A stretch of DNA of 64,000 bases. It comes from Caecitellus pseudoparvulus (Eukaryota > Protista > Bigyra: Bicosoecida). The DNA is taken from NCBI GenBank assembly GCA_965644315.1, contig CBFFRQ010000018.1:620001-684000 (forward strand), read 5' to 3'. Below the pieces are notes generated by a model, which saw only the letters and a program-made list of their open reading frames with translations, ran no database searches and had not been told where the DNA came from. Positions 27,001-64,000 of this stretch are shown piece by piece. Each line of letters starts with the position of its first letter. Position 1 is the stretch's first letter. The position numbers and the translations under genes were made by a program.

Positions 27001-30000
27001 TGCGAATGGAAGAGCCCACATTTTCTCCGGGACGGGTCGGAAGGTGGTGGAGGTTTTTGATGGGAGCGTCACGCTGAGCTCTGGCGAAGTTAGCATCGCC
27101 TCCGACACGGGTGACATCACCATCCAAGCGCAGGCAGCACAGGAACTGAAGCTCATCGGAGAAATCGGGACCGGAGCAGCTGGCGGGGGAATCTTGATGA
27201 AGGCTGGGAACAGCGACCTTAGCGCGGGACATGTTTCGATACTCAGCGGGGACAGCTCCCACGCGACGGGTGCCGGGCCTCTGGTGCTCTCGGCCGGAAC
27301 TGCGACGGCGTCCAATGCCCAGGGCGGCGACATTCACATTATGGCAGGTGAGTCCACCAGTGCTGTTGATAGTGTGGGTGGTCATTTGGTGTTGAAGGGT
27401 GGCAGGTCAGGCGCCAACGGTGTCCTGGGGCCAGGTGTATCTGCTGGGCATGTGAGCATCGTGGGTGGCAGCTCAGTGCACGACGCCCCAGCTGGGCGAG
27501 TCCTCATCGCTGCAGGTGAATGTGAGGGATCAGGGGTGCCCACGTGCAATGGTGGAGATGTCATTCTCAGTGCAACACAGCGCGCTTCGTCCGGAACACT
27601 GGATGGCAAAGTGCAGCTGTTCTCCGGCGACGGAACCTTGGCGTTTGAAGCAGACTCTCTGACACACTCCACAACTATTCATGAGAGTCATATTCAAATC
27701 CATGGAGGACAAAGCGTGTCCATCATGTCAGATGATAGCGCGTCGTCCCTGCCAGGGAAGGTGCTGCTGAGCAGTGGGGAAGGAAGCGCCCCCTTCGGAG
27801 GGGGTCCCATCGAAGTGCTAGGCGGCAGAGGGGGTGGAGATGGCGGTTGGGCAGCGCTGAGAGGTGGTCCATCTTCCACTGCTATTGGAGGGGCAGTGTC
27901 TGTCACTGCCGGTGCTGGTAGCACTGCTGCCGGCCGCGGTGGGCACGTACTTGTGCAAGGCGGGCAAGGCAGCGCGTCGAGCAGTGGGGGTGGCGCGGTC
28001 AGCATCCTGGGAGGCGAAGCGCTTGGGGGGAGCGGTGGTGACGTCATTCTACGGGCTGCTACTGGTGTGGGAGCAAACGGCGCTATTCGCGCGCAAGATG
28101 CCGGGGGCAACCTCGGCCTGCTCGTTGAAAATGGCCAGACGCAGGTTGCAGGCACACAAACGCTCATCCGCCCTCTAAATGGAGATGTGATGGTCAGAAC
28201 GGGCCAAGGGCACGACATTGCTCTGGATTTCTATGATGCAACCGCTGGTGAGATCACGATGACAGCTGGAGGCAGTGCTGCTGGAACTGCCGGCGGTGTG
28301 ACCATCACGGGCGGCGAGGCGACGAGCGCTGCAGCAACAAGCGGCAGCGTGGTGCTGCAGCCTGGCCTCCCCGGGGCTGGCTCATCGGGCTCTGTGATCC
28401 TAAGGAATGCGCATGGGTCGGCTGCGTCTGCACTTGTGCTGTCACCCGGGTCGACCCTTCTTTCGTCGGATGCCAGCACGCGGGTGGCCTCTGCGCCTGG
28501 CTCCCCAGTTACCATCGCTGCCGGTGGTGGGACAGGCACAGCGAGCCTTGGAAGTCACCTGATATTTGAAGCAGGGGGAAGCTCAGTGGCAGCAGGTTCA
28601 GTATCGATCACTGCTGGGGACGGGGGCAGCGCGGGAGGTAGCGTTGACGTTTGGGCCGGAAGCGGAACGACACCTGGCCGAGTCCGTTTGCTGGAAAGCG
28701 ACGGCTTGTCCGCGTCCGTGACCGTGGAGGATGGTTTGACAACCATAAACGGAGATGCAGTCCTCATTGACTCTGCAGGTTCTGGTGCAGGCCAGGTAAG
28801 CATTACCACCGCCGCGTTGCCTGGCAGCGTAGTGTCCATTGAAGCAGGTCGAGGGCGCCTGGGCTCCAATGGCGGTGCAGTGGCTATACACGCCGGCAAG
28901 AGCACGTCAGGCGGGGTTCCTGCTGGTGCAGTACTGATCGAAGGTGGCGAGGCAGCAAGCGGTGATGTGGGAGAAACAGGGGGCGCTGTGACATTGTCAG
29001 GCGGCGCGTCCACTGCAGTCGGAGGTCCGGCGGTGGTCAGCGGCGGCGACTCCACCACTGACTCAGGAAGTGGGGGGCATGTATCCTTACTCTCCGGAGC
29101 TGGCGGAAGGGACGGGGTGGGCGGAAACGTCATCTTGCTCGCTGAGGGGGGAGCAACATCCCCTGCCAGTGGCAATGGAAATGGCGGCCATGTCTCCATT
29201 ACTGCGGGCGCTGGCACTGGGACAGGCACAGCGGGACTCGTGACCATTAGAGCCGGCGCTGATGGCACTCCAGCTGGCGGAGCCTTGCGACTCCAATCAG
29301 GTGATGGCTCGAGTTCGCAGCTCCAAATGACGAACACGGAGGTGTCCATAAACACGCCCACGGCCACGCTGCAGACCTCCACAGGAATCTTGAGACTTCA
29401 AAGTGCAGAGGGGAGCTATGTGCGCCTTATTGCAGGCAATGAGGCCACTGGAGCAAACGGTGGAGATGTCGAAATCCTTTCTGGAAGGTCCACATCGGCG
29501 GCTGGGGGCGCGGTAAGCGTTGTGGGAGGTCCGTCCACCACAGCTGCAGGGGGGGCAGTGGCATTGGCAGGAGGGCAAGGCGCGGGATCGGGTGGACAAA
29601 TCAGCATGACTGGTGGGAGTGGCAGGGGAGGTGGGGAACACGGAGGAAATCTCGCTCTGAATGGTGGGGCGGGCGCAGGTGGAGCCGAAGGTGGAGATGT
29701 CAGCATCACATCCGGTGCCGCGGCAGGCGCAGCACGATCGGGCAGCATCTTCCTTTCCACTGCCGCAACACTTGGGACAGGAGATACTGGGAATGTCGTT
29801 CTTCAGACGGGTTCGCCAACAGCTGGTCATTCGGGGCACATGAGCATCTTGACTGGCGTTGCGAGCGCCGGAGACGAGGCAGGCAACATCATGTTGCAGC
29901 CTGGTCAGGCAGACGCAGTTCCACAGCACGGGAAAGTCGTAGTGCTTGATGCTGCAGGGACAGTTGCTTTGAGCGTGAGCAGTGGCACGACCGAGGTTTC

Positions 30001-33000
30001 TGCGTCAAGCCTGTTGAAGCTTGGCTCGACACTGCACGTTGAGGCGACTGCAGGTCTCGCAGGGCACGTGTCCATCGTGTCTGGATCTACAGGCACCGTG
30101 CTGCTCTCCAGTGCTGGAACACCTGGAGGGACAGCTGGACCAATCTCCATCGTGCCTGGTGCTGGAGTTGTCGGGGGCAGCCTGACAATAGGCTCGGGAA
30201 ACGGGGATGCCCCCACAGGCAACAGCGGAGAGGTGGTTGTCAAAACAGGCACAGCTACTGGAAATGCTGGCACACTTCTTCTGAGTGGAGGGCACTCGAC
30301 GTTTGCCGGTGCTGGCCCTCTAGGGGTGGCGTACTCTGCTGGAACCGTGAGCATTCTAGGGGGGGCAGCAGCAGACAACCCAAACTCGGGAGCGAACCTG
30401 GACAGTGCGGGGGGCGACATTGTCCTGTCTGCAGGTTCGGCGGCTGGTGACGAAGCCAGTGCAAGGGGTGGTCATGTTTCTATCCTCTCAGGGCAAGGCA
30501 CAGCTGCAGGGAGTCTGGTCTTGTCGGCCACCGGTGCTAGTGGGAACGCTGTCGTTGCCTCGCAGGCATCCACATCCATCGGCGGCTCTGAAATACTCCT
30601 GAGTAGTGCAACGGGCCCAGTGCAAGCCAGGTCTGTGGGGGGGCAAGCTGTGTCTATCTTGGGTGGTGGTGGCCCTGCTGGGGTCGTGGGGGGTAATGTG
30701 GTTCTGGAGGCCGGCGGCCATGGATCTGGGTCGGGAGGGGACATCGAAATAAACGGTGGATCCTCCTCTGCGACGGCATTCAGCGGAGGAGACGTCAGTA
30801 TCTCCGCTGGATCTTCCAGCGCGGTGTCAAGTGGGACGGGCGGTGCACTTGCTTTGCAAAGTGGCGATGGTTCTGGCACAGGGGCAGCGTCCGGGCCGGT
30901 GTCGCTAAAGAGTGGAAATGTCGCCACCGGCACTGTTGGGGAGGTGCTCATTTCTGCTGGGACAGCAACTTCGAGCGGAAGTGCTGGAAGCATCAGCCTT
31001 GTCGCCGGGGCTGCCCCCACTGCTGGGAACGACGGCAGCATCATCTTGAGTCTTGCAGGTGGCGTTGCAAGGGACGGGGCAGTGTCCATTCGTACGCCCA
31101 GCACCACTGTCTTTCAAGCAGAGCATGCCTTCACGACTGTGCAGGGACCAAAAGCTGATATCGTGACTACAGATGCGGGTGACGGTGCCCTGACACTCAC
31201 ATCAGCAGCCTCACAGCCTGTCCGCATCCATGGAGGGGGAGGGCTCAGTGGGACTATCGGAGGAGCAGTTGAGCTTGTGGCTGGGGCCCATGCCTCAGCC
31301 GCGGCCAGCGATGTGTCCATCTCTGGCGGGCGCTTTACAGGCACAGGGGCCTCCGCCGGAGGCGCAGTTGTGTTGCGTGGGGGTGCTGCGACAACTGGCA
31401 GCACTGGTGGCTTTGCCACGCTTGGAGGAGGAACGGGAAATGCCGGCGGGGATGCAAAGGTCGAAGGCGGCGCAGGAGTTGTGGGATCAGGGGGCACCGT
31501 ACAAGTCGAAGGCGGCACTTCCCCGTCCCAGGGCGGTGCTGTCGACGTTCGAGGTGGCTCGGGAACGGGTGGCGGGCTTGGAGGTCATGTACGACTCTTT
31601 GCTGGTTCGGGCTCGACAAGCGGTGACGTTCAAGTGCACCGAGTGGCTTCCCATGACGCGAGCACGCTCGCTTTGGAAGTATCCGACCTCAGGACTACCC
31701 TGGCGGGGCAGCATGCGCTGATCCAGGGACTGAATGGTGGCTCCGCTGAGCTCCGGGGCCCTGAACAGGGCTCTGTCCTACTCTCCGTCGTCGACACCAG
31801 CGCAGGTGGTGCTGGCCAAGGCATCAAACTGGCTGCGGGCGCACGCAGTGGCTCATCAACCTCTGGTGGGACCCTCGAGCTGCTAGCGGGCAGCGGGGCT
31901 GGCCACGCTTCTTCTCAGGGAGGAGATCTGATCGCTTCGGCTGGATCAAGTGAACAGTCCAGCGGCGGTGTGGTCGAAATCACTGGTGGGGCTGGTGGCT
32001 CTGGCTCAGGAAGTGGACAAGGCGGAATAGTGTCTATAACAGGTGGTGCTGGAGGCTCAGCGACAGCTGCCGGGACACTCAGCGCGGGGCATGTGCTTTT
32101 GCAAGGAGGGCCGGCGTCCAATACCGCGAACGGCGGAAGCATATCGCTTCTTGCCTCTTCGGGGCACAGCTCTGGAAATGGTGGCTCTGTCTTGGTAGCT
32201 GCAGCCCCGGGTGCAGGTGGAGATGGCACAGTGATCGTCAGAACGGGTGCTGGGCGGGATGCAGTGCTTGTTACTTCGACAGACCTCTCGTTCGCCAGCG
32301 ACACCATCAGCATTCAAGCGGATGGCGTCAGTACAGGCACAGTCACACTGTCATCAGGTGGCGCTTCGGCTCTTTCGCTGCTGGCGGGCCCTGGAGCACC
32401 AGGGGTCAACGGTGGCTCTGTTTCCATCATGGCTGGGAACAGCCTCGGTGCTGATGCTGCAAGCCATGGTGGCAGCTTGCAGCTGAATGCTGGAGCTGGC
32501 AGTGCTGCGAACGACGGCGGCCAGGTTGCACTGGAGGCTGGTTCTGGACGAAATGGGGGGGCGGTGTCCATTCAGGCGGGAACTGGCACGAGCACGGCAG
32601 GTCAAGTGCATCTCTCCGCAGGGTCTGTGGGAGGTCGATCTGGGGCAGACCTGGAACTGGGTGGCGCGCATCCCGGAGACGCGAGCGACGGTGATATCAC
32701 CTTGCAAGCAGGCGGTGGGGGCGGAGCAGCCGGTGGTGACATGTTCTTGCTGACTGGTGCAGGCTCCAGTCAAGGCTCCTTCATGTTGTCGATTGGATCT
32801 GAGACCACTGCCCGCATCGCTGCAACTGAGTCATCCACCGCCATTGGTTCCAGCACGATTGGTGGTGGTCTATCTCTCACATCTAGGGACTCTCTTGGGA
32901 GTACGCTTGCTCTGAGCGCCGGCTCAAATAGCGGTTCGTTTGGATCTGCCGTGAGCCTCACTGCAGGGCGGGGATCTGGCGCAGTGGATGGCGGTAGTGT

Positions 33001-33817
33001 AAGCATTTTAGCAGGAAATGGACACGCTGGCTCTGACGGCGGAGACGTTGAACTGCGGGCAGGCTCTGGTACTACCAACGGCCAAGTACGAATGTTGGAT
33101 GGTGCTGGCAGCACAGTGCAGGCTTTCGGCAGCGACAGCTGGGCTGTAACAAGCCAGGGAACGGTCTCCATTTTCAGTCACGATGGGGACGGCATAAACA
33201 TAGCTGCAGGTCAATCCTCTGGGGTCACCCCAAGCACTGGGGGGGGAGTTTCGCTTGCAGCTGAAGATGGCAGCACCCTGGGCGGCTCTATTTCCTTGCA
33301 AGCTGGCAACAATGGAGGGTCCGTCGTGATTGCGCCTGGATCGTCGGGTTCAGTTGAGGTAAAGTCCTCTGATGGAACTGCAGCCATAAGAGTGAAATCC
33401 GATGACACCCTTGAGTTTTTGAAGCCCATTACGTTTACTGGTGGTGCTGAGCTATCTGCCAGTGGTCCCATGTCGACTCACGGTGTGCTGAAAATCCCGT
33501 CTCAAGAGACTCCAGGCACGGCATACACCATTTTCGATGTCGCCACCCGAGGCGCGCATACCGCCCTTTCTCCCTTCGATGTCAGAAACACGCTTGTGCT
33601 GCGCATATTTAACAATGGGCCAAGTGGTGGGTCTGAGAATGTCCACCTGCTGTGTGATGATGGGCAGTTGTTGTACGTGCTGAATGAGGACGTGGACACG
33701 CTCGTTATCAGCCGCCAGACATGCGGAGCACCTCTGGCTGTGCACGACACCTTTACGTATAACGTAGCACCGACTTCTATCGGTTTGTACTTTTGTAACT
33801 GTCCTTCTGTGCGATGA
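21063..33817 (+). CDS. Giant secreted protein (about 4,170 aa): N-terminal mastigoneme-type EGF module plus long Gly-rich beta-repeat fibre
   Basis: Signal peptide [19 protein letters not shown]. Three small exons encode [32 protein letters not shown] and [14 protein letters not shown]. They splice into a 3,996-codon exon (CPVGDNP...[16 protein letters not shown], then many GGxVx[IL]xxG repeats). Confidence 0.85.
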
Positions 33818-39550: not shown

Positions 39551-40029
39551 TGTGGCAATGGTCCTCAAGCCCCTCCGCAGGTCTTGCTTTTGCGGGGGAG
39601 ATGCCTGGCTCTTGTCGCTGGCGTTGCGCCGCCTCCTGCTTGCGCAAGGCGTGCTATTCGCCTAGAAGCACGTGACCTGATGATAGATGACTGAAGCGTC
39701 AAAAAGCTATTCACGAGACTATTCTGCCTGAGGCTTGTTTTTGTCCTATGGTGCCTGCTTCGCTAGCGACTGCTCTTCTGCTTGTTTTGGGACGGCTCAG
39801 GGGTACAGTGGCTGCCTCAAACCTCCGCGTCAGGCAAGGCATACATTTGCAGGCTGATCTCAAAACACCGTGCCTCACTTGCGTTGGAATGAACAGCTTT
39901 CCTGTGGCAACCGAGACTACCCAAAGTACCCAATGTTTTCCTGAGGAGGCCACTTGCGGAAATTGGCTCCCACTGAACAGACCAAGCTCCCTCCAAGAGA
40001 GCACAGAGACAGTGAACCTCATTGCCGAT

Positions 40030-41202
40030 ATGGCTGCTACAGCTTCATCTCGCAAGCGGTCGCTTGATACTTCTGATGCGGGTTCTCCTGGGCTGCGCAA
40101 GCGAGACTGGACAGTGTCCATCGCCCTGCCTGGCTCCATTGTGTCCAATGCTCAAAGCAGAGAGCTACAGACACACCTCGTGGGTGTCATAGCCCGAACA
40201 GCTTGTATTTTTCAGATTGATGAGGTTGTTGTCTTTGATGATGGTTGTGATGCAGGCGGAAAGCGCTTCAATTCGTGCGAGTTCATGGCCCGCCTGCTGC
40301 AGTACACGGAGACGCCGCAGTACTTGCGGAAGGCGTTGTTTCCGAGGCACCCTGATCTGAAGCTGGCGGGGCTTTTGCCGCCCTTGGATGCCCCCCACCA
40401 TCTCCGGTCAGATGAGTGGTTCACGTTTCGTGAGGGCGTGGTCCTGGACAGGCCATCTGCAGGCGGCTCCATCGTTGACGTCGGACTGCGGCAGTCTGCC
40501 TCTATCCCGCAAGCCTTGGTGCCTGGAGTTCGTGTAACAGTGCAGTTTTCTAATCCCCACGCCCCCAAAGGCATGCATGCTGCCCATACCGTCGGGCTCT
40601 CCACTGCAGCACAAGAAACTGCGGCGGCTGCTCACCGTTCGTCATCCGCTCCTCAGCAAAAGAGCAAAGGCAGTACGTAGGAGCACCAATACTTGATTGC
40701 GTAAACCCCCCCCCCGTGCCTCACTCCCCACTGTTTTTCCCGCGCAGCTCTGAAGGGGTCGGCCGTGTCACCCAATGCGCCAGTGCGCGAGCAAGGTGTG
40801 TACTGGGGATATTCAGTCCGAATGGCAACCAGCCTAAGTGCTGCCTTGACAGAATGCCCATGGAGTGAAGGTTACGACCTGCTGCTTGGGACCAGCGAAA
40901 GGGGCGCCGAGCGTGTAGATGACGGTGATTTTTCTCTACCTTCTTTCAAGCACCTGCTCATTGCCTTCGGGGGTGTGACCGGACTTGAGGAGGCGGCCAT
41001 GTCCGATTCAACCTTGGCTGCGGCTGGCATCACTGATGTTCAAGACGCTTTCCACATGTACGTGAACACTTGCCCATTCCAAGGTAGCCGCACGATCCGT
41101 ACTGAGGAGGCCCTGGCGATTTCATTGGCGACCTTGCAGCCTGCGATAAAGACGTGCCAATCTGCTGCATCTGCTCCAAAGAAACCAAGGATGGACGCAT
41201 AG
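40030..41202 (+). CDS. SPOUT1: SPOUT-domain RNA methyltransferase (C9orf114/CENP-32)
   Basis: TVSIALPGSIVSNAQSRELQT, IFQIDEVVVFD, ETPQYLRKALFP, LLPPLDAPHH, GTSERG and NTCPFQGSRTIRTEEA; one intron near 40570-40747. Confidence 0.92.
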
Positions 41203-44144: not shown

Positions 44145-46109
44145 ATGACTGCTGGTGATCCTACCTCTCATGGAGGCTACACATTCTGGGTGGGAGTATG
44201 TTTCACCGTCAACTTCATCCTTGGAGCTGGGTTCCTTGGAGTGCCCTTTGCATTTGTTGAAGGTGAGCGGGCCGGCAGGCAACGCCGTGACTGTCTGCAC
44301 TGACCTAGCCCTTGGGATGCAGGAGGAATACTTCTTGGCGCTTGTCTCATGCTACTGTTCTGTGCGACCTTGGTCACAACTAAGGACTGCCTCCTCGAAG
44401 CCATGGGCCGAGCAGAGCTCCTAACACGAATGGTTGAGAAAGTGCGGTCAGGGGACCACTCGCCCCTTGCCACCAAGGATGCTCTGGTTGCTGAGAGAAA
44501 GTTTGAGATGTCCGCCATCGTCACCATGCTGCTGGGCAACGTGGCAAAGTCTGTGTATGTTGTGTTCGTCTGCCTGTACGTGTACGGGACGCTGTGGGCG
44601 TTCTCCTCAGTCTTTGCCGCCAGCTTGTCGGCCAACGTCCCCATAGTGTTTTTGGACACCCAAACATGTGATGTGGAGGCTGATCCTGGATGCCTTGTGA
44701 ACTTCAGGATCTGGGAGGCTCTCTTCGCGGCAATCGTCATCCCCCTCTCGTTGCTGGACCTGTCAGAGCAGAAAGTGGTACAGGTACTCATGGCTGCGGC
44801 GAGGGCCATTGTCATTCTCCTATTGGTGTGCACCGTCTATGCTGCAGTGGGCTGCAAAGGGGTCGCGTTCACCGCGGTGCAGCCCCACCTTGAAGGCAAG
44901 ACATACGAACCGTATGGCGTCATGGCCCGTCCAGCTGGGCTTGGCGTGCTCATCCCCATCGCAGTTTTCAGCCAGATCTTCCACGTCGGCATCCCATCCC
45001 TTGCCGAGCCTCTGGCAGACAAAAGCCACTTGGCGCGGATGTTCAGCGCAGCCTTTGCCGTTGTCCTGACCGCATACATGATCCTGGGCACCTCACTTGC
45101 GGCCTACTTCGGGCAGGAGGCAGATAGCCAGATCAACTTAAATTGGGCTGGCTATGTTGGATGCGTTCACAGGGAAGCAGGGGACCCCAGAGGGGAAGTG
45201 CACAACGACGAGCGATCGCTGTGGGCAGCCTTCACCGCCACGGTGGTACTCATTTTCCCAGCGCTTGATGTTGCTTCGGCTTTCCCACTGAATGCTATTT
45301 CCTTGGGGGACTCCCTGTTGGCAGTTTGGCAGCAACCTGCCGCCTTAGAAGCGGATGAAGGGGAAGCCCGGGAGCCAGCGTCTCCCTCAGAAGGCCTCCT
45401 GGCAGCAGATGAAACCACTCTGTCCTACGAAGCTGTGACGGCTGACCTAGAAGACTCGCCTGCATCTCCTGCCGAAGATGTGGCGCCACATCACTCTCAA
45501 GATGTGCCACAGACTGATGCTACATCGCCTCGTGGCTGCCTTTCCTACTGCCGTGTAGGAGCTGCCCAAAGAACCAAGCTTGCATTCAGAGTCCTGGCAG
45601 CGGTCCCTCCTCTCGTCGGAGCATTCTTTGTTAATAAGCTGGACACAATCCTCACCTACACAGGTCTTGCCGGCATCGTGCTTGCCATGATAACCCCAGC
45701 TCTCCTCTCTGCCGCTTCGAAAATCGCCGTGGAGCGAGCACTGCCGGCTTTCGAGGCCTGGAGAGTCGCAAATGCCGCGGGCTCTGACCATGCTCTTGAC
45801 TCTGCAACACTGGAATCACTGCAGCAGACTGTCCCTGTGCGGGACATCTTCGCCGCACTCACTTCAGGTCTTTGCTGGCGCGCAAGCAAAGCAGATGAGC
45901 ATGGGGCCTACTCAATCCTCCCAACTGCACAAAGGTCATCTGGCCAAGAGCAGCAGGAAACCAAAAGGTCATCAGAACCAGCACCATCTGAGCTCTTGCG
46001 CTCTGCATACTCAACCTGTGCCACAGCCCTTTGGGGCAACGCCTCCATCATGGCACTTGGATCCGTCCTGCTTGTCTACTCTCTCATTGCAACCATAGCC
46101 AGCGGATAA
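44145..46109 (+). CDS. Amino acid transporter, TMEM104/SLC38-like
   Basis: FTVNFILGAGFLGVPFAF, intron, then KDCLLEAMGRA, YGTLWAFSSVFAASL, FHVGIPSL and FPALDVASAFPLNAISLGDSL; about 11 TM helices. Confidence 0.85.
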
Positions 46110-46115
46110 GCGAAC

Positions 46116-46615
46116 TTAAACTTCACTTTCGTCATGCTCGCCCGAGGATGAAGCTGCAGCCCGGGCAAGCGCTTTCGCTTCTGCATCTCGCAGCTTTCTC
46201 AGCTGCTCAAGTTCGCGAAGACGATGCGCTCGGAGACGTTCTTGCTCAGCCATATGCATCTCATAGATGTCTTGGTAGCGGCTTCGGTTCAATCCAAGCA
46301 TTTCCACCAGAATCTCACCTACAAACTCGGCGCCTGCGTGCACAACACCACAACGGCTGAGCACGCAAGTGTCATGAGCGAGGTGCACGCACGCGCAACG
46401 AACCATCAAAAAGCTGCGAACCAACCCAATGCATGTTGTGCCAAATTTGAGTTCCTGCTGTCACCTCGGCATCAGCATCTGCTTCCCAGTAGTACTGCGC
46501 ATTGGTTGAGTGGCTGTGAAAACGCACGCGAAACGCAAGGCGAAACTCGAACCCATACCCTGCTTGAATCGGCTGGCGGGGGCTCTGATTGAGACCCTTC
46601 CTCCGGCGTTGCCAT
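46116..46615 (-). CDS. FAM177-like small protein
   Basis: Inferred spliced product (2 introns) MATPEEGSQSEPPPADSSRYYWEAD...WHNMHWVGSQLFDGAEFVGEILVEMLGLNRSRYQDIYE plus a coiled coil. It resembles the FAM177A1 segment DFLGEKIASVLGISTPKYQ. Confidence 0.55.
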
Positions 46616-46887
46616 TGCCTTTGTTCTAACGATGATCGACCCTCAGAGGGCCAGAAGGTGCGCTTGCCTGCCCGACAATCCGCCCGAAACGAACGATGAC
46701 CAATGTCCGCCTCAGAAAGCGGAGGACTCGCAGATAGATCCAAAGTAATCGTGCAAAGTCAGTTGGAGAAAGTAGGGGGGGGGTGTACAGAGTAAAATTG
46801 CCATGTAATGCATTTGTCTCACAGCCGACCAATCGACGAGGAGGCGGTCCAAACACGAAATGCTCCAGCCAGCGACCTGACACCCAC

Positions 46888-47860
46888 CAAGCAATCGCGC
46901 ACATGAACCCCACTCTACCCTGGCCTTCACACGCCAGCGCCCACTGCTTTCCCCCAAAGTCTGCCAGGTGAGACTCACCGCAGTAACAGCTGTGCCCTTG
47001 CCCCCCCGCACTCCTCCACAGCACGCACACGATGGGAAGGAACTCTCCTTCCTTGTACCTGCAGCAGCAACGCAACGGGTGCGCGATGCTGCTTGGTGCT
47101 ACTCCGCAGCCCATTTCCGTCGAGACAACACAAGGCGCACTGCACAAGCCAGCACGCCCGCATCCAGAGCCTGGCCTACAGTGAGGCAAGCCCCACGCAC
47201 CCCACACACTTGGCAAAGGAACCTGACATCCCTGTGACCCGCATGATGCTTGCCACCGACAGCGCAGCAGCACTGTCGACAAACACCCCAGTGCAGCGCC
47301 GACTGCGCACAGTCAGCATCATGACACCGCCTGGCCCGACCACACCTTGGCCCATCTTGCTCCCATGATTCCCAGTACAGCACTCAGCACGTCTCACACA
47401 TGGCGACAGTCAGGTGCACAGGTGCCATGAACACGTGCGTTCCCGCACAAGAACGCGGAGGTGACCGAAGGTTGCACAAGCTCTGTGCAGCCATCTTGAC
47501 CAAACTGAAGTGTCTGTGCACAGATCTTTCTGCCTGCGCAGCATACACCACGACCCTTGTCACAACCAGATATGTGAAGTGAAGCCTCAGGCGCTGCTGT
47601 GTCTGAGCACTCCAGTGTAAACAGCGCTGCACCCAAATGCGCCATCCGCGATGCACTGTGAACGGGAGAGTGTGACAGCCACGCACGGCCCGCCACACGA
47701 GACAATGTTCATCTTCATGTCCACCACACTGCAGTAAGGTGGAGGATGGAGTTGGGACGGCAAGACACATCGTTTGTACATGTAGGCGTGGGTGAGGAGC
47801 TGGGGAGACATACAAGGGTGGGCTCACAGACAAGGAGCATTGCGACCGTGCCGAGCGGAA
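46888..47860. repeat. Left arm of a 973 bp near-perfect inverted repeat
   Basis: Reverse complement of 49362-50334; paired coordinates sum to 97222. The ORF track gives identical translations on opposite strands. One mismatch seen at 46894/50328. Confidence 0.97.
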
Positions 47861-49361
47861 AGAACTTTGTGCGTGCTTAAGCATGTTCATACTGCGTTGT
47901 ACGTTTTTCTGTTTGTTACTTTGTACTTACAAGTTCGGCAGTTAGCACAAGGCCCGATGCTTGAAGTGGATTTTGCTGCTGTCATTGTGGTTTACGCCAG
48001 AATGAAACAGTGTGCGATGAATTTGAGCAACACTCGGTAGACTTTTTGCGGGTGCTGCACATGTATCCTGTCCTCCCTACAGCATGGGGAGCCCTAAATG
48101 AGAATACTACGTGGAGGATCAATCCTCTGTATCGTTAAATTGAGATTGGACAGTGTAAGGCATGCTTGCCTGTCTGGTTTCAAAACCTTGCATTCGTTTT
48201 GTACACACTGTGTTTGCATTGTACTTCTTGTCGCTGAGTTTCAGGGGGCAGCAAGACGAAATTGCACCAAGCATAAAAGGCATGCTACAATCTCGCAGGA
48301 GAATCGGCTGCACATTGGATGCCTCAATGCCTTAAGATACACAAGGTTGGTCTTCAACGTACATTTTCGTCAACAATCACCTTTTCAAGCTGCATTTGAC
48401 TGCGAGAGACGTTACACAGGCATTCTCACCGCTTGTGCTTGTCAGCGTACGTATCCGAGTTGCTCATTGTTCGCTCTTCAACTTCTTGAACAGTCACAAA
48501 ACATGGGACATCTCGTGCGGGAGACCTTCTTCTCGGGTTTTTCGTTGCTGAGCAAGCTTGGCTGCTAGAATATGGTAGAACTTTTGCAGCATGCTTGAAC
48601 TGCCACTTTCTCAAGGAAGATGTGTCTAGCTAGTAACCATTGTCAGTACTGCACTTCAATTGAAACATTGCTGCGCGTGACTTGTTCAAAGGCTAAAGAA
48701 TCCATCCCAAGGCTACACGAATAAGAGCAGAGAAGCCCCATGATTCTTCTCTGAACAAATATGATTGGATGACTACAATGATTTTCATGGAGTGATAGGC
48801 TACCAGACCATCAGTACGAATAACACGCTTCAAGTTTGTGCGCTGAAGAATTAGGCATAGGAAAAGCAGCCATTCTCGTAGGCTTTGAGACATCGAGGCT
48901 GAAGGGAGAACCACATTAGGGCACCAAATATTGCCTGCATTGCCCGAGCGCATGCGGATTGCAGTTGAAGAATCAATTTTCGACTTGGTTGGTTAGAGCA
49001 TTGAAGCGAACGTTTACCATGACTGAAGTTGTGTGCAATTATCGGCTTCACTACCTCACATCACAATTTGAGCTGTGTGATTACAGTTCCAGGCGTAGAG
49101 TTGAAAGTGCAGAGGTCTTTCATCCCTGTCTAAGTGAGTAAATGCAGTGTAAGGCATGAAGCAAGATTGTCCCTCTTCAATATCAAACGAGAAGGGACAA
49201 AAACAATCTGCCAATCGCATGTACTTTTCACGGATGTGAGCGTTCGTTGCGTGACGATCGATACCACAACAAGCGCCAAAACCGAAGCATTAATTTCAAC
49301 GTAGAATGCGAGAAATCACTTTACCATGAAAGCATGAATTCGCATCCAAATTACAATACAA
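47861..49361. other. AT-rich non-coding core between the inverted arms (candidate centromere core)
   Basis: About 40-45% GC by eye against about 60% elsewhere. No recognisable ORF or intron-exon structure. Confidence 0.6.
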
Positions 49362-50334
49362 TTCCGCTCGGCACGGTCGCAATGCTCCTTGTCTGTGAGC
49401 CCACCCTTGTATGTCTCCCCAGCTCCTCACCCACGCCTACATGTACAAACGATGTGTCTTGCCGTCCCAACTCCATCCTCCACCTTACTGCAGTGTGGTG
49501 GACATGAAGATGAACATTGTCTCGTGTGGCGGGCCGTGCGTGGCTGTCACACTCTCCCGTTCACAGTGCATCGCGGATGGCGCATTTGGGTGCAGCGCTG
49601 TTTACACTGGAGTGCTCAGACACAGCAGCGCCTGAGGCTTCACTTCACATATCTGGTTGTGACAAGGGTCGTGGTGTATGCTGCGCAGGCAGAAAGATCT
49701 GTGCACAGACACTTCAGTTTGGTCAAGATGGCTGCACAGAGCTTGTGCAACCTTCGGTCACCTCCGCGTTCTTGTGCGGGAACGCACGTGTTCATGGCAC
49801 CTGTGCACCTGACTGTCGCCATGTGTGAGACGTGCTGAGTGCTGTACTGGGAATCATGGGAGCAAGATGGGCCAAGGTGTGGTCGGGCCAGGCGGTGTCA
49901 TGATGCTGACTGTGCGCAGTCGGCGCTGCACTGGGGTGTTTGTCGACAGTGCTGCTGCGCTGTCGGTGGCAAGCATCATGCGGGTCACAGGGATGTCAGG
50001 TTCCTTTGCCAAGTGTGTGGGGTGCGTGGGGCTTGCCTCACTGTAGGCCAGGCTCTGGATGCGGGCGTGCTGGCTTGTGCAGTGCGCCTTGTGTTGTCTC
50101 GACGGAAATGGGCTGCGGAGTAGCACCAAGCAGCATCGCGCACCCGTTGCGTTGCTGCTGCAGGTACAAGGAAGGAGAGTTCCTTCCCATCGTGTGCGTG
50201 CTGTGGAGGAGTGCGGGGGGGCAAGGGCACAGCTGTTACTGCGGTGAGTCTCACCTGGCAGACTTTGGGGGAAAGCAGTGGGCGCTGGCGTGTGAAGGCC
50301 AGGGTAGAGTGGGGTTCATGTGCGCGACTGCTTG
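49362..50334. repeat. Right arm of a 973 bp near-perfect inverted repeat
   Basis: Starts TTCCGCTCGGCACGGTCGC and ends TGCGCGACTGCTTG; it is the reverse complement of 46888-47860. Confidence 0.97.
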
Positions 50335-50467
50335 AATGATGGCTGTTGAGCTGTGCTGTGACAGTGCCACGGCACCTTCAAAAACCTGACACACCACGTC
50401 GCACCCTCGTTTTTCAATTGTGACGTTTAGGTATTTTTTTCTCCGGTTTTTACACTTCTGGTGAATA

Positions 50468-52139
50468 ATGCGCCATGAAGCTGTTCTGTGGGGAGGGCTC
50501 CTGCTGGTTGTCGGTACTGGGACATTGGTGAACGGACCCCGGAACTTCTCCGGGTCAGAGTTCGCTGATGAGGTCGAACAGGAGCTTTGGTCAGGTAAAA
50601 TTGGATGCGGTGTAATATGGGTTTGCGCTGGCTTTCTTCTGCGTGGCCCATACCGTCGTTTGGTGCACTACCCGGCACTGTTTGCTTGCAGGCCCAAGTC
50701 GAAACGCGGACAAAACGCTACGACGAGTGACTGGAAAAGTTGGCATTGCCATGAACCTGTACAACAACGAAGACATCATGCCTGGATTTTTTGATGAGCT
50801 TGTGAAGTTATTCCTCTTGGTTGGCCCTGAATCAGTTGCGTTGAGTGTGTATGAGAGCGGGAGTCGTGATGGGACTCCAGTGCAGTTGAGCCAGTGGCAG
50901 CGTGTGTTGCAGCACATGCATGTGCCGGCAAGGATCGAAGCACTCGGGACTTCAAGCGACTGGAGGGCCATGTGCAACGTTGCGTTGAACATGAACTGCA
51001 CTGTTTGGGACTGCACTTCGCTTCGGGCTTGTCGTGACCACGTGCGCATTCCGACCATGGCTTGCTTGCGCAATGCGGCATTGGAGCCGTTCTTCCCTGG
51101 CTCGGCGTGCTCAGAAAGTTCTATTGAGCAAGGTACGCTGCTTGAGTTGGGTGCAGATGACCACCTGCTCTTCATGAATGACGTGCTTTGGGGTGTGCAC
51201 GATGGGGTTGAGCTGCTGACTGTCGGTGGTGGCTCAGCCGACCTAACCTGCTCTTTGGATGTGGAGAGGCTGAAGCTGTACGACACCTGGGTTGCTCGGG
51301 ACGTTGAGGGAGAGGTGCTGCATGCCTGGTATCCCTACTTCAGGCGCCCTGATGATATTGCAGCTGCTGTGCGAAACGAACCGGTTCGAGTGTATTCCTG
51401 TTGGAATGGCCTTGCAGCATTTCGAGGGAGTGTGTTCGGAGCAGGTGGGGTTCGCTTCCGCAGTTGGCGTAGAGATGAGATGCGCTCGCCACACCCGCTA
51501 GCGCACTTCTCTGGCGTTTTGGTTCGAGACGGTGCAGGTGAGTGGCTGCCGCCTGGCATGGAGGTGCCTCCGTTCCCCAGCTGGCCGCACACGTATGAGA
51601 CTCGAGCTTGTGCTGCTTCGGAGTGCACCCTGGTCGCAAAGGACATGTGGGAGCAAGGACTGTCACGCATTTTCATGCATACGGGGGTGCAAGTGTCGTA
51701 CAATCCGCTGACTCAGTTCCTCCACAACTATGTCCTGGCTTGGTTGAACCCTCTGCTGCACGCCGTGCTCGGGGCACAGTCAACTCTGACGCGAACGGCA
51801 GCGGTGGAGGCAGTGCAGAGGACTCTGCATGGGACCCGATTGAGTCCTGCTCATTGGAAGGCATTGGCTGCTGCGCAGGCAGGGTTGTCTAGCCGTACCC
51901 TCGTTGCCGCAAACGTCCTGCCTCGCAACGTGTCCAGCTTGTCAGACAAGGAGGGTGCGGTGTCTCTCGCAGAGTGGTGGCAAGGCAAGGTTCTCGCAGC
52001 TCCAGCGTGCTCTGTGGGTGTTTGTGAGGCGGCCCTGCCCCCTCTGCATGTTGCGTGTGGCACAGATGAGGAGAACCACGTTGTCACGCCAGACCTTGGG
52101 GCCAGGCATGACACGCCAGAGGAGCTTTGGGTGCACTAG
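50468..52139 (+). CDS. CAP59/CMT1-like alpha-1,3-mannosyltransferase (GT69)
   Basis: N-terminal signal/TM exon, then IAMNLYNNEDI, SVYESGSRDGT, LRNAALEP, LFMNDV, YDTWVARD, VYSCWNG and ASECTL. Confidence 0.85.
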
Positions 52140-52592: not shown

Positions 52593-52945
52593 GGCTGATG
52601 CTGTGTGAGGAGTGGTGCACGAGTTGGCGGGCCGCAGGTACGCTGGGCTGCTCTGCCTGACGTGTGAACGCGAGAACGCGAGAACGCGAGAGACACGAGG
52701 AGTACTGCACGGGTTGCCGGTCGTGGGAAGAAAGTGAATGTTCGAGGTTGTTGTGTGTTGCGCACCCATCCGAGTTCTGGCTGGTGCAAGGCTCCTTTGC
52801 ACCCCTGCTGCCCGACCCTCTGAAACGCGCGCCTGCCAACATTGACCTCTGCCCTTCACAAAAAGTCAGGCAGCGCTGTGATGCAGGTACATTCGCGTGG
52901 CTCTCTGGCCAAGCCGATTCCCCATCTGTGCTACCGTGGGTTGCG

Positions 52946-53671
52946 ATGGCTGAGAGCGGAAATCGATCAGGGCTTGTGGTTTCCTCTTGCACCTCATCAG
53001 CGCCGATTGACAGTGTGGTGGTGCAAGTGAAGGAAGGAGAGCGGCCAATTCCACCTCAGGTGCCCCCAGTTGCCTTAACTGTGCCTGAAGGTGACTTTTG
53101 CGACTTGATTCTTCACATCCCTGCCACATCTGCTGTGGCTCTGAGAAGCACTGCCAGACTTGTGGAGGTATACACCTGCGATGGAAAAGGGTACCGGTAC
53201 ATCAGCACCCTGAAGGCAAAGCAGTGCGGGACAGTACTTGTTTCAGGAGTAGAGATTCCGGTATTCGCTTGCCTGGGCAGTCTGAAGGTTCCAGCAAAAC
53301 CGGTGCTGCAGCGAGCAATTCGGCTGCGTCTGCTTGGGCGAGCTCCCTGTCCCAATAAATCCGACATGTGCTTTGTGCAAGGCTTGATCGTCCGAGTAGG
53401 TGAGGTGAACATTGCCCCTCATGTCCCTCGACCTGGCTTGGCTGCAGCACTCGCTGCAGTGAAGGGCGCTGCCGGAGGACAAGGGAGCACAGACTCACCG
53501 ATGCCAGCCGCCATTCAGGCAAGAATCGCTGACACTGTTGTGCGGCGCTTGGAACCCACATTGTCCGCAATTCTCTCGCGGTTTGATGCACTGGAAGCCC
53601 GATTTTCAGCGCTGGAAGCCCGCATGGCCTCTGTACAGCAACAGGCTGCAGCTGCTACCCCAGAACCTTGA
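52946..53671 (+). CDS. Hypothetical protein, possibly PAAT/C10orf88-like
   Basis: ALRSTARLVEVY...YISTLK resembles the PAAT segment ILSSARNMEVY...YCGTSRG. C-terminal coiled coil. Confidence 0.45.
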   Translation: MAESGNRSGLVVSSCTSSAPIDSVVVQVKEGERPIPPQVPPVALTVPEGDFCDLILHIPATSAVALRSTARLVEVYTCDGKGYRYISTLKAKQCGTVLVSGVEIPVFACLGSLKVPAKPVLQRAIRLRLLGRAPCPNKSDMCFVQGLIVRVGEVNIAPHVPRPGLAAALAAVKGAAGGQGSTDSPMPAAIQARIADTVVRRLEPTLSAILSRFDALEARFSALEARMASVQQQAAAATPEP

Positions 53672-61708: not shown

Positions 61709-64000
61709 TCAGCGCCCTAGCACCCGTTTCCCTTGCGTGCCCTGCCCCGTCACGAACGCTACCGTGTCCGCCAGCCAGGAAAAGTTGTGGTGCCGCGCGA
61801 GGGAGGCAAACACTTGCAACGACTTCTGCATCTGCTGGGGCGATTCCCCGCAAGCGTACTTGCCAGAATACGAAGAGTAGACCCCCAGCTTGTCCGCCTT
61901 GACTTCTTTGCTTTTTGTGCAGTAGAGGTCCTGTGTTTGATAGGCTGCGCTGCGTTGGTGGACCAGGGAGACGAGGGTCTTCTCCACCTCCCCTCGGTCG
62001 TACACTTCTCCGCAGGCATCACAGGCCCATGCTCGCACAAAAGCACTTTCCGAGGCACCTGGCATGCGCGCCGGTATCTCCTTGAAAATCGGGTCCCTGC
62101 ACAGATCCAAGTCACGGGCTCGCAAACAAGCAGGGTTGGCGCAGATGACGGGAAGCACGACCGTGTGGCAAGGCTCGTGCCAGGCGGCTTCGGGCGTGAA
62201 GTCCTCCACGTGCAGCATGCGCAAGAGGTTCTTGCGCATGATGGCCACTTGCCCTGCCAGCTCGGCATCCAGGGCCAGCACTCGGCATACTGCCTTGGCG
62301 AACTCAAGAGCGGGGTTCGTCATTTTCAAGTGCCCTCCGGGTGGGTCTGGGAACTGCATGTCCCCCCGTGCATCCAGCATGAGTGCGTTGGTGTATCGTT
62401 GCGCAGCAGGCAGAATCTTCTCCTCGAACAGCTTGTGCATGAACACTGTCTCTGCCTCTGCTTCGTTGCTCTCTTCTTCCATCGTGAGTGGAGCTTCCAA
62501 AACACGCTCCAAAGCATCTGCGTCGGACACACTCGCCATTCGCAAATCCTCTGTGCTGGCCACAGTGCCAGCTGGGGCACCAACTTGCGTTTGAGAGGCC
62601 ATGAAGGCTGTCATGCGCGCAGTTCGGCGCTGAGAAGCTCTCAGGCGCTTGAACTGGTCAACTTTCTCGATGAGGAAGCCAGTCGTTGCTGCGAACGCAC
62701 GCTGAGCCTCCGCAGGAAGGAACGTGGCGATGTTCCACGTCACCCACTTATGGGTGCGAAGGCTGCTCAAGGAGACATCCACTGTCGTGTCTGCTCCTTG
62801 CCTCGCGGGTCCTTGCACGTCTTCATCCTCGTCGTCACTCTGCTCCTTCTGGTCTGCTGCGTTGCGCGCAGCTTGCCGTGCTTCGTGGCCCTGCAAAGCC
62901 TGCAAGTAAGCCTGCTCCAAGGCGACTCCACCGTAGTTGGCAGAGTCCAGGAACACCAAGTTGGTCCACACCCTCTCAGTTGTAGACTGCAGGTGCCGGA
63001 ACAGGGGCTTCTGCAGCATGGTATTCATAATGTAACGGACGTGAGCGATGGCCGCTAAAGGAGTGCTCTTGTTCGTTGACAGGGTAAGCTGGTGGAACGT
63101 CGCATGCACGACTGTGCCGCCCAGGCCCCTGATCTCCGAAATTAATGTGTGGAAGCACCGCCGCATGAGGCTGTGCACTGCTTGCAGCAGCAGCGGGTCG
63201 TACAGCAACGAAGACGGGCTGGACAACCACTTGTACACATTGTCAAGCATTGCGTGTGCTTCATCTGCTCCTGCGCCCCCCCGCAGCACAGTGTTTGCCC
63301 ACCTTCGCAGGAGCGCACGCAGAACACGCAGTGCTGCAGACACATCGCCCCCCTCTCCCGCCCCTGCAGCTGCAATGCCGGCTGCTTGCTCATCCCCCGC
63401 GGCGTCCTGACCGTCCGCAGCAGGCAGGGCTGCCATGCTCCCAGACATGTCATCCAGTGCATCGTAGTTTATGATGGAAGTGATGACAAGATTGAGGCGA
63501 AACTCTACACAGATCCGGCGGTACGTGCCTGGGCGGGAGATGACGGGGCTTGCGCCAGGCGCGCGCTGAATCGACAATGGGTCGGAGTCGCTGCCTAACT
63601 CTCCTGCGCCACGCTGGGCTTTCCCGGCCATCCGTCCAGCTGAGTGGCTTTGGTTTGCTGCCGCAAAGTCTCCGCCGCCCGCAGCAGTCACTGCAGCGGC
63701 AAGTGCAGCCTCGCTGCCGCCCAAATCAGGTTGCAGCGCGTCTGAAGCCCACAGCAAGTGGGCATTATTCGTCAGAGCACGCCCATAGGCAATGTCCAGG
63801 GCATGGCTTCGCACAGTGCCACCCGGGACATTGCCAACGGGCAGGTGGTGGAAGGTTGCTGCAGCCCTGCGCTGCACGAGCTCCCACTGCGCCTCCCCGA
63901 ATCGCTGCAACACTCTTGCAACCATGGGCCCAGCCCACCGCCAGCCAAGCGCATCCCCTGTGAGGAGGTCCACATCTGCTTTGTGTGGTGCAAGCTCTAC
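61709..64000 (-). CDS. POLE: DNA polymerase epsilon catalytic subunit, C-terminal part (gene starts beyond the window)
   Basis: DUF1744 region (HLLWAS..PDLGG, PGTYRRICVE, WLSSPSSLLYDP, DSANYGG), NPALEFAKAVCRVLALD, and CysA zinc finger (CANPAC...DLDLCRD...CDAC). Confidence 0.93.
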   Translation of the reverse strand, partial: VELAPHKADVDLLTGDALGWRWAGPMVARVLQRFGEAQWELVQRRAAATFHHLPVGNVPGGTVRSHALDIAYGRALTNNAHLLWASDALQPDLGGSEAALAAAVTAAGGGDFAAANQSHSAGRMAGKAQRGAGELGSDSDPLSIQRAPGASPVISRPGTYRRICVEFRLNLVITSIINYDALDDMSGSMAALPAADGQDAAGDEQAAGIAAAGAGEGGDVSAALRVLRALLRRWANTVLRGGAGADEAHAMLDNVYKWLSSPSSLLYDPLLLQAVHSLMRRCFHTLISEIRGLGGTVVHATFHQLTLSTNKSTPLAAIAHVRYIMNTMLQKPLFRHLQSTTERVWTNLVFLDSANYGGVALEQAYLQALQGHEARQAARNAADQKEQSDDEDEDVQGPARQGADTTVDVSLSSLRTHKWVTWNIATFLPAEAQRAFAATTGFLIEKVDQFKRLRASQRRTARMTAFMASQTQVGAPAGTVASTEDLRMASVSDADALERVLEAPLTMEEESNEAEAETVFMHKLFEEKILPAAQRYTNALMLDARGDMQFPDPPGGHLKMTNPALEFAKAVCRVLALDAELAGQVAIMRKNLLRMLHVEDFTPEAAWHEPCHTVVLPVICANPACLRARDLDLCRDPIFKEIPARMPGASESAFVRAWACDACGEVYDRGEVEKTLVSLVHQRSAAYQTQDLYCTKSKEVKADKLGVYSSYSGKYACGESPQQMQKSLQVFASLARHHNFSWLADTVAFVTGQGTQGKRVLGR

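What the first reader, a model, noticed from the sequence alone, without database searches (positions are those of the whole stretch)
46888..50334. 973 bp inverted repeats around a 1.5 kb AT-rich core: candidate inverted-repeat centromere or invertible element
Seen: arms 46888-47860 and 49362-50334 are exact reverse complements apart from one visible mismatch. They enclose 1,501 bp that is the most AT-rich DNA in the window. The structure fills the only multi-kb gene-free gap (46616-50467), between divergently transcribed genes. There is no target-site duplication (left flank ...GACACCCAC, right flank AATGATGGC...) and no transposase, integrase or capsid ORF. Known: IR-core-IR is the layout of the small regional centromeres of Komagataella phaffii, Candida tropicalis and S. 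pombe (imr-cnt-imr), and diatom centromeres are short low-GC islands. Inference: this is a compact IR-type centromere in a stramenopile, which I am not aware has been described. Near-identity of the arms implies ongoing gene conversion or flip-flop inversion, or else a very recent origin. Alternatives are a foldback or non-autonomous TIR element, a deleted virophage/Polinton remnant, or a long hairpin RNA locus.
Basis: partly seen in the sequence, partly recalled or inferred. Interest (0 to 1): 0.9.

Follow-up and report, generated by a model that had tools for sequence, protein, structure and literature searches.

The report
Conserved non-coding palindrome, candidate small centromere
A 3.4-kb gene-free DNA palindrome (two 973-base mirror arms around a GC-poor 1.5-kb centre) is real, is also present in close relatives, and its arms are kept identical by copying between them; it has the layout of the small centromeres of some yeasts, but that role could not be tested here.

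Summary
Arms 46888-47860 and 49362-50334 are 973-nt reverse complements with one mismatch. They enclose 1,501 bp at 44.5% GC, against 59.8% elsewhere. There is no target-site duplication, no coding signal, no Pfam, PHROGs or Rfam hit, and no second copy in the 64 kb.

New evidence came from using spurious ORFs of the element as probes. They found five proteins on short ENA contigs. One 14.8-kb contig carries two arm copies that are identical to each other but differ from the window's arms. It shows the same arm/core junction and a conserved core. So the palindrome predates the split of these lineages and its arms evolve in concert. This argues against a very recent origin and against a chance assembly chimera.

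The number of element variants roughly matches the number of strain variants of a nearby single-copy gene. That argues against a high-copy transposon.

The centromere reading remains untested. The core never falls below 40% GC, so it fails the diatom low-GC criterion.

Best guess: an inverted-repeat-type small regional centromere, confidence about 0.35. Rivals are a functionless palindrome, a low-copy terminal-inverted-repeat element or its remnant, and a hairpin-RNA locus. The 'stramenopile' label is only weakly supported.

The parts
46888..47860 (.). Left arm of the inverted repeat. It is 973 nt, GC 0.59, and non-coding. The strand read from the core outward is G+T-rich.
47861..49361 (.). 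Unique GC-poor core. It is 1,501 nt at GC 0.445, with no internal repeats. Its 156-aa ORF (48098-48568) has no protein family and only one near-identical homologue, from a relative.
49362..50334 (.). Right arm of the inverted repeat. It is the reverse complement of the left arm, with one mismatch opposite 46894.
46616..46887 (.). Unique spacer of 272 nt between the putative start of the left neighbour and the left arm.
50335..50467 (.). Unique spacer of 133 nt (GC 0.45) between the right arm and the start codon of the right neighbour.
46116..46615 (-). Neighbour: a putative small FAM177-like gene, probably of two exons. The evidence is weak. Its ORFs were searched apart and not joined.
50468..52139 (+). 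Neighbour: a CAP59-type mannosyltransferase gene. A signal-anchor exon starts at 50468 and the main ORF is 50643-52139. The ORFs were searched apart and not joined.
44349..46109 (+). Neighbour: a 586-aa ORF with coding signal on the + strand and no Pfam family. It ends 6 bp from the end of the FAM177-like ORF.

Best explanation
SHOWN: a single-locus, non-coding nuclear palindrome. Two 973-nt arms surround a unique, GC-poor 1.5-kb core. It fills an intergenic gap about 20 times the usual size in a compact, intron-poor eukaryotic genome. The same arm-core-arm arrangement exists in at least one diverged relative. Within each genome the arms are identical, while they differ between genomes.

INFERRED MECHANISM: the arms pair and exchange sequence by gene conversion. 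This erases differences between them, and crossovers would flip the core. The core has no partner and behaves as recombination-cold DNA. That could explain why its GC lies about 15 points below both the arms and ordinary intergenic DNA, if gene conversion is GC-biased here.

INFERRED FUNCTION (the committed guess): a small regional centromere of the inverted-repeat type. The centromeric histone would be seeded on the core and decline along the arms, as in Komagataella phaffii and in the imr-cnt heart of S. pombe centromeres.
For: - Structure and uniqueness in the window.
- GC step exactly at the arm/core junctions, with the core below any other DNA in the window.
- No coding, RNA or mobile-element signature.
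- Largest non-coding gap in a window where a normal divergent promoter is about 180 bp (39569-39747).
- Conservation in relatives. Arm ORF probes find P0125-P0129. P0128 and P0129 are each listed with a 14,838-bp contig and are 100% identical over 148 aa, yet differ from the window by at least 7 residue changes and 2 indels. P0129 continues about 67 aa into the window's core sequence, and P0128 does not.
- Without conversion, about 15 arm-to-arm differences would be expected in 973 nt. One is seen (P about 4e-6).
- Element variants (the window plus 4) roughly match strain variants of the nearby single-copy SPOUT1 gene (the window plus 3, differing by 2-4 of 310 aa). This suggests about one locus per genome.
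- The core ORF has a single homologue among 1.84 billion representatives, at 87% identity. That is the same locus in a relative, not a protein family.
- K. phaffii centromeres are virtually identical 2-kb inverted repeats around a core of about 1 kb, in the only large gene-free regions of a compact genome (PMC5010909).
Against: - No direct centromere evidence exists. The copy number per chromosome is unknown, and there is no occupancy, contact or transcription data.
- The core is only moderately GC-poor, with a minimum of 0.40 in 100 bp.
- K. phaffii centromeres have no GC dip, so the two analogies are being combined.
- The gap is 3.85 kb with a gene start 133 bp from one arm. That is tighter than the 6-9 kb silent regions of K. 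phaffii.
- The strong strand asymmetry of the arms is not predicted by the centromere model.
- Arm identity could be inflated if a short-read assembler collapsed the arms.
Confidence: 0.35

Rival explanations
1. A functionless structural palindrome. An inverted duplication arose once in an intergenic region by a replication or repair error. It persists as junk, and its arms are homogenised simply because long inverted repeats recombine.
For: No function-specific signature of any kind was found. Divergence from relatives is roughly neutral: about 8% of residues differ in arbitrary arm frames and 13% in the core. Concerted evolution needs no function.
Against: The genome is compact, with intergenic spacers of about 0.2-0.7 kb. 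Retaining 3.4 kb of junk through the divergence of several strains is therefore unexpected. The core's GC is unlike any other non-coding DNA in the window. The arms match nothing nearby from which they could have been duplicated.
Confidence: 0.2
2. A low-copy non-autonomous mobile element with long terminal inverted repeats, either foldback-like or the gutted remnant of a protein-primed element such as a Polinton-like element or virophage. It inserted in a promoter region.
For: It has the terminal-inverted-repeat-plus-core layout. The core differs in GC from the host. Related copies lie on several short contigs, which could be paralogous insertions. Long identical terminal repeats are typical of protein-primed replicons (general knowledge).
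Against: No target-site duplication of 4 bp or more exists at any offset. There are no transposase, polymerase, integrase or capsid hits in Pfam or PHROGs. There are no foldback-type subrepeats. No other copy or fragment occurs in the 64 kb. Only about one variant is seen per strain variant. There are no matches in viral contigs. The arms have host-like GC, and the core has a host-like dinucleotide signature.
Confidence: 0.2
3. A hairpin-RNA or regulatory locus. Read-through transcription would give a 973-bp double-stranded stem processed into small RNAs. Alternatively, the core would be an invertible or bidirectional promoter serving the two flanking genes.
For: The arms lie 133 and 272 bp from the apparent 5' ends of the two neighbours. 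The outward strand of each arm is G+T-rich, and its skew continues into the right-hand gene. This is compatible with outward transcription.
Against: The arms resemble no gene in the window that could be a target. No RNA family matches. Gene sense strands here show no consistent skew of that size. No expression data could be consulted.
Confidence: 0.12
4. An assembly or amplification artefact, such as a chimeric inverted join or collapsed repeats.
For: The source of the window is unknown. If it is a short-read assembly, the orientation of the core and the exact identity of the arms are not fixed by the reads. Related contigs are short, as happens when assemblies break at repeats.
Against: The two outer junctions lead into different, real genes, not into mirror-image flanks. 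One mismatch followed by 6 matching bases at the outer end shows two distinct arm copies. An independent, diverged contig also carries two arm copies with different inner neighbours.
Confidence: 0.05

Closest known systems
Komagataella phaffii centromeres (inverted repeat-mid-inverted repeat; Coughlan et al. 2016, PMC5010909)
   Same: Both have two virtually identical inverted repeats around a unique core of about 1-1.5 kb. Both lie in the outstanding gene-free gap of a compact genome, lack conserved motifs, and have arms that recombine.
   Different: The arms here are half as long (1 kb against 2.0-2.7 kb), and the gap is 3.85 kb against 6-9 kb. K. phaffii cores are not compositionally distinct (37-41% GC against 41% for the genome), whereas this core is 15 points below the genome. 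Cse4 binding and one-per-chromosome are shown there and untested here. The organism here is not a fungus.
S. pombe imr-cnt-imr and Candida tropicalis homogenised inverted-repeat centromeres
   Same: A central core flanked by inverted repeats. The S. pombe core is also relatively AT-rich (general knowledge).
   Different: Those are several-fold larger. S. pombe adds outer heterochromatic repeats and tRNA boundaries, and there are no tRNAs here. C. tropicalis centromeres resemble one another across chromosomes, which could not be assessed here.
Diatom low-GC centromeres (Diner et al. 2017; criterion as quoted in PMC12227449)
   Same: A short GC trough of 0.5-3 kb in an otherwise gene-dense chromosome, in what may be a related lineage.
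   Different: The diatom criterion uses 100-bp windows at or below 32% GC. The minimum here is 40%. Diatom centromeres are not described as flanked by long inverted repeats.
Large palindromes of primate sex chromosomes (general knowledge)
   Same: Arms are kept more than 99.9% identical by arm-to-arm gene conversion. Arms evolve in concert between species and diverge more slowly than the spacer. Here 9 of 67 core residues differ against 7 of 157 arm residues (P = 0.02).
   Different: Those are 10 kb to Mb in size and carry genes in their arms. This one is 3.4 kb and non-coding.
Foldback and long-terminal-repeat DNA elements, and Polinton-like elements
   Same: Long terminal inverted repeats around a middle segment.
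   Different: Here there is no target-site duplication, no subrepeats, no element genes, and no evidence of multiple insertion sites.

Membership tests
Inverted-repeat-type small regional centromere (K. phaffii / C. tropicalis / S. pombe core) | Centromeric histone (CENH3/Cse4) occupancy peaking on the core | not testable with these tools
   No occupancy data were available, and the organism is unidentified.
Inverted-repeat-type small regional centromere (K. phaffii / C. tropicalis / S. pombe core) | Exactly one such structure per chromosome | tested here: inconclusive
   There is one in the 64 kb. The number of element variants in the protein collection roughly equals the number of strain variants of a single-copy gene. 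Other chromosomes could not be seen.
Inverted-repeat-type small regional centromere (K. phaffii / C. tropicalis / S. pombe core) | Near-identical inverted repeats flanking a unique core | tested here: met
   972 of 973 bases match, with a 1,501-nt unique core.
Inverted-repeat-type small regional centromere (K. phaffii / C. tropicalis / S. pombe core) | Gene-free, untranscribed region that stands out in a compact genome | tested here: inconclusive
   Gene-free by the coding scan and family searches, and the largest gap in the window. Transcription was not testable.
Inverted-repeat-type small regional centromere (K. phaffii / C. tropicalis / S. pombe core) | Position conserved among strains while the sequence evolves fast | tested here: inconclusive
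   The structure and sequence are conserved, with about 8-13% residue differences, in relatives.
Diatom-type low-GC centromere | 100-bp windows at or below 32% GC clustered within about 3 kb | tested here: not met
   0 of 28 core windows are at or below 0.36 GC, and the minimum is 0.40. The drop is only relative, 0.445 against 0.598.
Cut-and-paste terminal-inverted-repeat transposon / foldback element | Target-site duplication flanking the terminal repeats | tested here: not met
   No direct repeat of 4 bp or more at any offset of +-10 bp.
Cut-and-paste terminal-inverted-repeat transposon / foldback element | Multiple dispersed copies at different sites | tested here: inconclusive
   None in the window. 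There were no exact-pattern matches in JGI metagenome, viral or prokaryote-genome contigs. Five related ORFs lie on ENA contigs whose flanks are unknown.
Cut-and-paste terminal-inverted-repeat transposon / foldback element | Transposase gene, or subrepeat-built arms for foldback elements | tested here: not met
   No Pfam or PHROGs hits, and no tandem or internal repeats in the arms.
Polinton-like element / virophage remnant | Hallmark genes: protein-primed polymerase, integrase, capsid proteins, packaging ATPase | tested here: not met
   No family hit for any ORF of the element. The core ORF has no homologue beyond the same locus in a relative. No recognisable genes, intact or broken, were found.
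Palindrome maintained by arm-to-arm gene conversion | Arms identical within a genome but diverged between lineages (concerted evolution) | tested here: met
   P0128 equals the tail of P0129 (100% over 148 aa). Both differ from the window's identical arms by at least 7 substitutions and 2 indels.
Hairpin-RNA (endo-siRNA) locus | A transcript spanning both arms, with small RNAs mapping to them | not testable with these tools
   No expression data. No target-like similarity in the window.

The most novel reading that the evidence does not exclude
This is the centromere of its chromosome: an inverted-repeat-type regional centromere of only 3.4 kb in a non-fungal marine protist, possibly a stramenopile. 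It would combine the yeast-like inverted repeat-core-inverted repeat layout with a diatom-like GC trough, and its arms would be maintained by gene conversion. It would give a sequence rule for finding centromeres in compact protist genomes and metagenome-assembled genomes.
Probability: 0.3. Interest if true: 0.8.

Novelty: new variant of a known kind. Interest (0 to 1): 0.55.

Why it matters
Protist and algal centromeres are mostly unknown. A 2026 atlas lists all sampled protists and algae as 'cryptic' (10.64898/2026.09.17.752431). Centromeres with an inverted-repeat layout are so far described only in a few fungi (PMC5010909).

If this palindrome is a centromere, it would show that this architecture evolved convergently outside fungi. 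It would also offer a purely sequence-based way to locate centromeres in uncultured picoeukaryotes.

Even if it is not, it is a compact and clean case of concerted evolution of a non-coding palindrome, with a compositional step exactly at the arm/spacer boundary. That is useful for studying gene conversion and GC bias in a microbial eukaryote.

Tried and rejected
The ENA/Logan contigs that carry the relatives could therefore not be read. This blocked the orthology and empty-site test.
- An exact pattern from the outer arm end found nothing in viral contigs or JGI metagenome contigs.
- A pattern from the arm stretch conserved among relatives found nothing in prokaryote genome contigs or viral contigs.
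- The CAP59-like neighbour used as a protein probe found no locus in metagenome contigs or genome contigs.
- An ORF in the outer third of the arm found no homologue.
- None of nine window ORFs is present exactly in the protein collection, so contig lengths could not be used to link flanking genes to the 14.8-kb contig.
- Rfam at a permissive threshold, tRNA scan and tandem-repeat scan were all negative for the element.
- Rejected: an organelle-DNA insert or a gene pair in the arms, because there was no family hit or coding signal.
- Rejected: a decayed longer palindrome, because the core has no self-complementarity.
- Rejected: a foreign core, because its dinucleotide signature is host-like. 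This evidence is weak.
- Literature searches found no inverted-repeat centromere reported in stramenopiles, thraustochytrids, pelagophytes or Mamiellales.
- The two apparently spliced neighbour genes were searched exon-ORF by exon-ORF, by reference. The joined models were left out.
Full report
**1. Observation**

The repeat finder reports one inverted repeat in the region, with arms 46888-47860 and 49362-50334, 973 nt each and 1,501 nt apart. A base-by-base comparison finds a single mismatch at 46894, seven bases from the outer end. There is no extension beyond either end. Across the whole 64-kb window this is the only direct or inverted repeat of 40 nt or more. A 21-nt terminal pattern with up to 3 mismatches occurs only at the two termini, where shuffles predict 0 matches.

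The core is 44.5% GC. The rest of the window is 59.8%. The 1,501-bp windows outside the element average 0.598 with sd 0.021 and a minimum of 0.551. GC steps from 0.56 to 0.41-0.43 within 150 bp at each junction. Ordinary intergenic DNA in this window is 0.54-0.60. The core is therefore the least GC-rich DNA here, but it is not AT-rich in absolute terms: no 100-bp window falls below 40% GC.

No direct repeat of 4 bp or more flanks the element at any offset of +-10 bp.

**2. Content**

- A hexamer coding scan trained on ten confident genes of the window shows the neighbouring genes clearly. It shows nothing in the arms and only near-zero noise in the core.
- Eighteen ORF translations from the element give no Pfam hit at E <= 1 and no credible PHROGs hit.
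- Rfam finds nothing, even at E <= 1. There are no tRNAs.
- There are no tandem or internal repeats, and no similarity between arm, core and the rest of the window.
- The core's dinucleotide signature is host-like, with CG 0.78, TA 0.56 and CA 1.39.
- The arms are strongly strand-asymmetric. The outward-reading strand is G 34%, T 24%, C 26%, A 17%, and TGTG/GTGT are enriched 3.3-3.6 fold. This remains unexplained.

**3. Setting**

The window is nuclear DNA of a compact, intron-poor eukaryote. It encodes a DEAH helicase, a BET bromodomain protein, a proteasome subunit, a MutS homologue, SPOUT1, a rhomboid, and the C-terminal part of DNA polymerase epsilon.

The best named relatives of SPOUT1 are a 'Symbiodinium sp. 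KB8' entry at 87% identity, which is probably a contaminant contig. After that come brown algae, oomycetes, Phaeothamnion and Cafeteria at about 50%, alongside animals and plants at similar scores. 'Stramenopile' is therefore plausible but not established.

To the right, a CAP59-type mannosyltransferase gene starts at 50468, 133 bp from the arm. To the left, ORF586 (+) ends at 46109. A small minus-strand ORF at 46116-46424 has a sub-threshold FAM177 hit (E 6e-4), with a possible first exon starting at 46615. The gap is thus probably a divergent intergenic region of 3.85 kb. The MutS/SPOUT1 divergent spacer, by comparison, is 179 bp. Both apparently spliced neighbours were searched exon-ORF by exon-ORF, by reference. 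The joined models were left out.

**4. Relatives**

Direct routes failed. DNA patterns and the neighbour protein found nothing in JGI metagenome, viral or prokaryote-genome contigs.

I therefore used spurious ORFs of the element as probes into the protein collections, which include ORFs called on ENA and Logan contigs.

- The inner-arm ORF (47384-47890, minus strand) found three ENA proteins at 76-93% identity.
- Their 90% clusters add P0128 (148 aa) and P0129 (226 aa). Each is listed with a contig of 14,838 bp.
- P0128 is identical to the last 148 residues of P0129. That contig therefore appears to carry two copies of the arm, identical to each other over the equivalent of 444 nt.
- Both copies differ from the window's own mutually identical arms by at least 7 residue changes and 2 indels.
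- The first 67 residues of P0129 map onto the window's core next to the left arm at about 87% identity. P0128 lacks this extension, so its inner neighbour is different.
- The relative therefore has the same arm/core junction, a conserved core, and a second arm copy abutting other sequence. That is the same inverted repeat-core-inverted repeat.
- The core ORF156 has exactly one homologue among 1.84 billion representatives: P0130, 87% identical over 133 ungapped residues, on a 1,090-bp ENA contig. This is the same locus in a relative, not a protein family.
- An outer-arm ORF found nothing.

**5. What this shows**

(a) The palindrome is older than the split of these lineages. If the arms evolved independently at the minimum observed between-lineage rate, about 15 arm-to-arm differences would be expected in 973 nt. 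One is seen (P about 4e-6). The arms are therefore homogenised by gene conversion, and a very recent origin is excluded.

(b) An independent, diverged contig with two arm copies argues against a chance chimera.

(c) SPOUT1, 6 kb away, exists in the collection as three variants that differ from the window by 2-4 of 310 residues. So at least four close strains are sampled. The element is seen as four variants besides the window. That is about one locus per genome, which does not fit a high-copy transposon family.

(d) In the same relative, the core differs more than the arms: 9 of 67 residues against 7 of 157 (P = 0.02). This is the pattern seen in conversion-maintained palindromes.

Caveats:
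- Orthology was not shown, because the flanks could not be read.
- If the assemblies are short-read, the arms may have been collapsed. In that case the exact arm identity and the core's orientation are not determined by the reads.

**6. Interpretation**

The shown part is a conserved, non-coding, concertedly evolving palindrome with a compositional step at the arm/spacer boundary.

For function I commit to an inverted-repeat-type small regional centromere, with confidence about 0.35. The architecture, the gene-free setting in a compact genome and the recombining arms match K. phaffii centromeres. Those have virtually identical 2-kb repeats around a core of about 1 kb, Cse4 highest on the core, and polymorphic orientation (PMC5010909). 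A GC trough is the hallmark of diatom centromeres (criterion quoted in PMC12227449).

Against this:
- No centromere-specific evidence exists here.
- The diatom criterion is not met in absolute terms.
- K. phaffii shows no GC dip.
- The gap is small.
- The arm asymmetry is unexplained.

Rivals:
- A functionless palindrome (0.2).
- A low-copy terminal-inverted-repeat element or the remnant of a protein-primed element (0.2). This is weakened by the absence of a target-site duplication, genes, subrepeats and extra copies.
- A hairpin-RNA or regulatory locus (0.12).
- An artefact (0.05).

**7. Novelty**

The literature searches found no inverted-repeat centromere reported outside fungi in the groups considered. 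Pelagomonas putative centromeres are 200-300 kb lower-GC regions. A recent atlas calls protist and algal centromeres 'cryptic'. If this is a centromere, it is a new variant of a known kind.

**8. Process notes**

- One search printed a residue-level tblastn alignment of a relative's spurious ORF against the window across reading frames. The region shows no likeness to any virus in my tools. However, the finding names a Polinton/virophage remnant as one alternative, so I flag this as a possible slip. I give only counts and outer bounds here, and nothing was deleted.
- A functional maintenance or mobilisation assay is not proposed.

Noticed in passing
window 21827-33817 (+): An uninterrupted 3,996-aa ORF with no Pfam family. 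Its sense strand is G-rich (GC skew +0.13 to +0.25), and it holds three diverged 51-nt internal repeats. It may be a giant repetitive protein of unknown kind.
   Followed up: partly
window 39748-40680 (+): The closest named relative of this SPOUT1 gene is 'SPOUT1 [Symbiodinium sp. KB8]' (CAE7357652.1), at 87% identity on an 8.2-kb contig. The window's gene layout is not dinoflagellate-like. That entry may therefore be a contaminant from a relative of this organism.
   Followed up: partly
window 46109-46116: ORF586 (+) and the FAM177-like ORF (-) end only 6 bp apart. This is a convergent gene pair with almost no 3' spacer, which underlines how compact the genome is.
   Followed up: no
window 46888-47860 and 49362-50334: The outward-reading strand of each arm is markedly G+T-rich, with TGTG/GTGT enriched 3.3-3.6 fold and GC skew up to +0.3. 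This exceeds any gene in the window and is unexplained.
   Followed up: partly
window 61709-63973 (-): The C-terminal part of the DNA polymerase epsilon catalytic subunit (DUF1744 plus zinc fingers). The gene runs off the end of the window.
   Followed up: no
whole window: None of nine window ORFs is present exactly in the 15-billion-protein collection, yet variants 98.7-99.4% identical are. The window's own strain is absent, but at least three sister strains are sampled in ENA/Logan assemblies.
   Followed up: yes
window 52666-52691: A perfect 8-nt tandem repeat of 3.2 copies lies at the very start of the 335-aa ORF 52664-53671.
   Followed up: no
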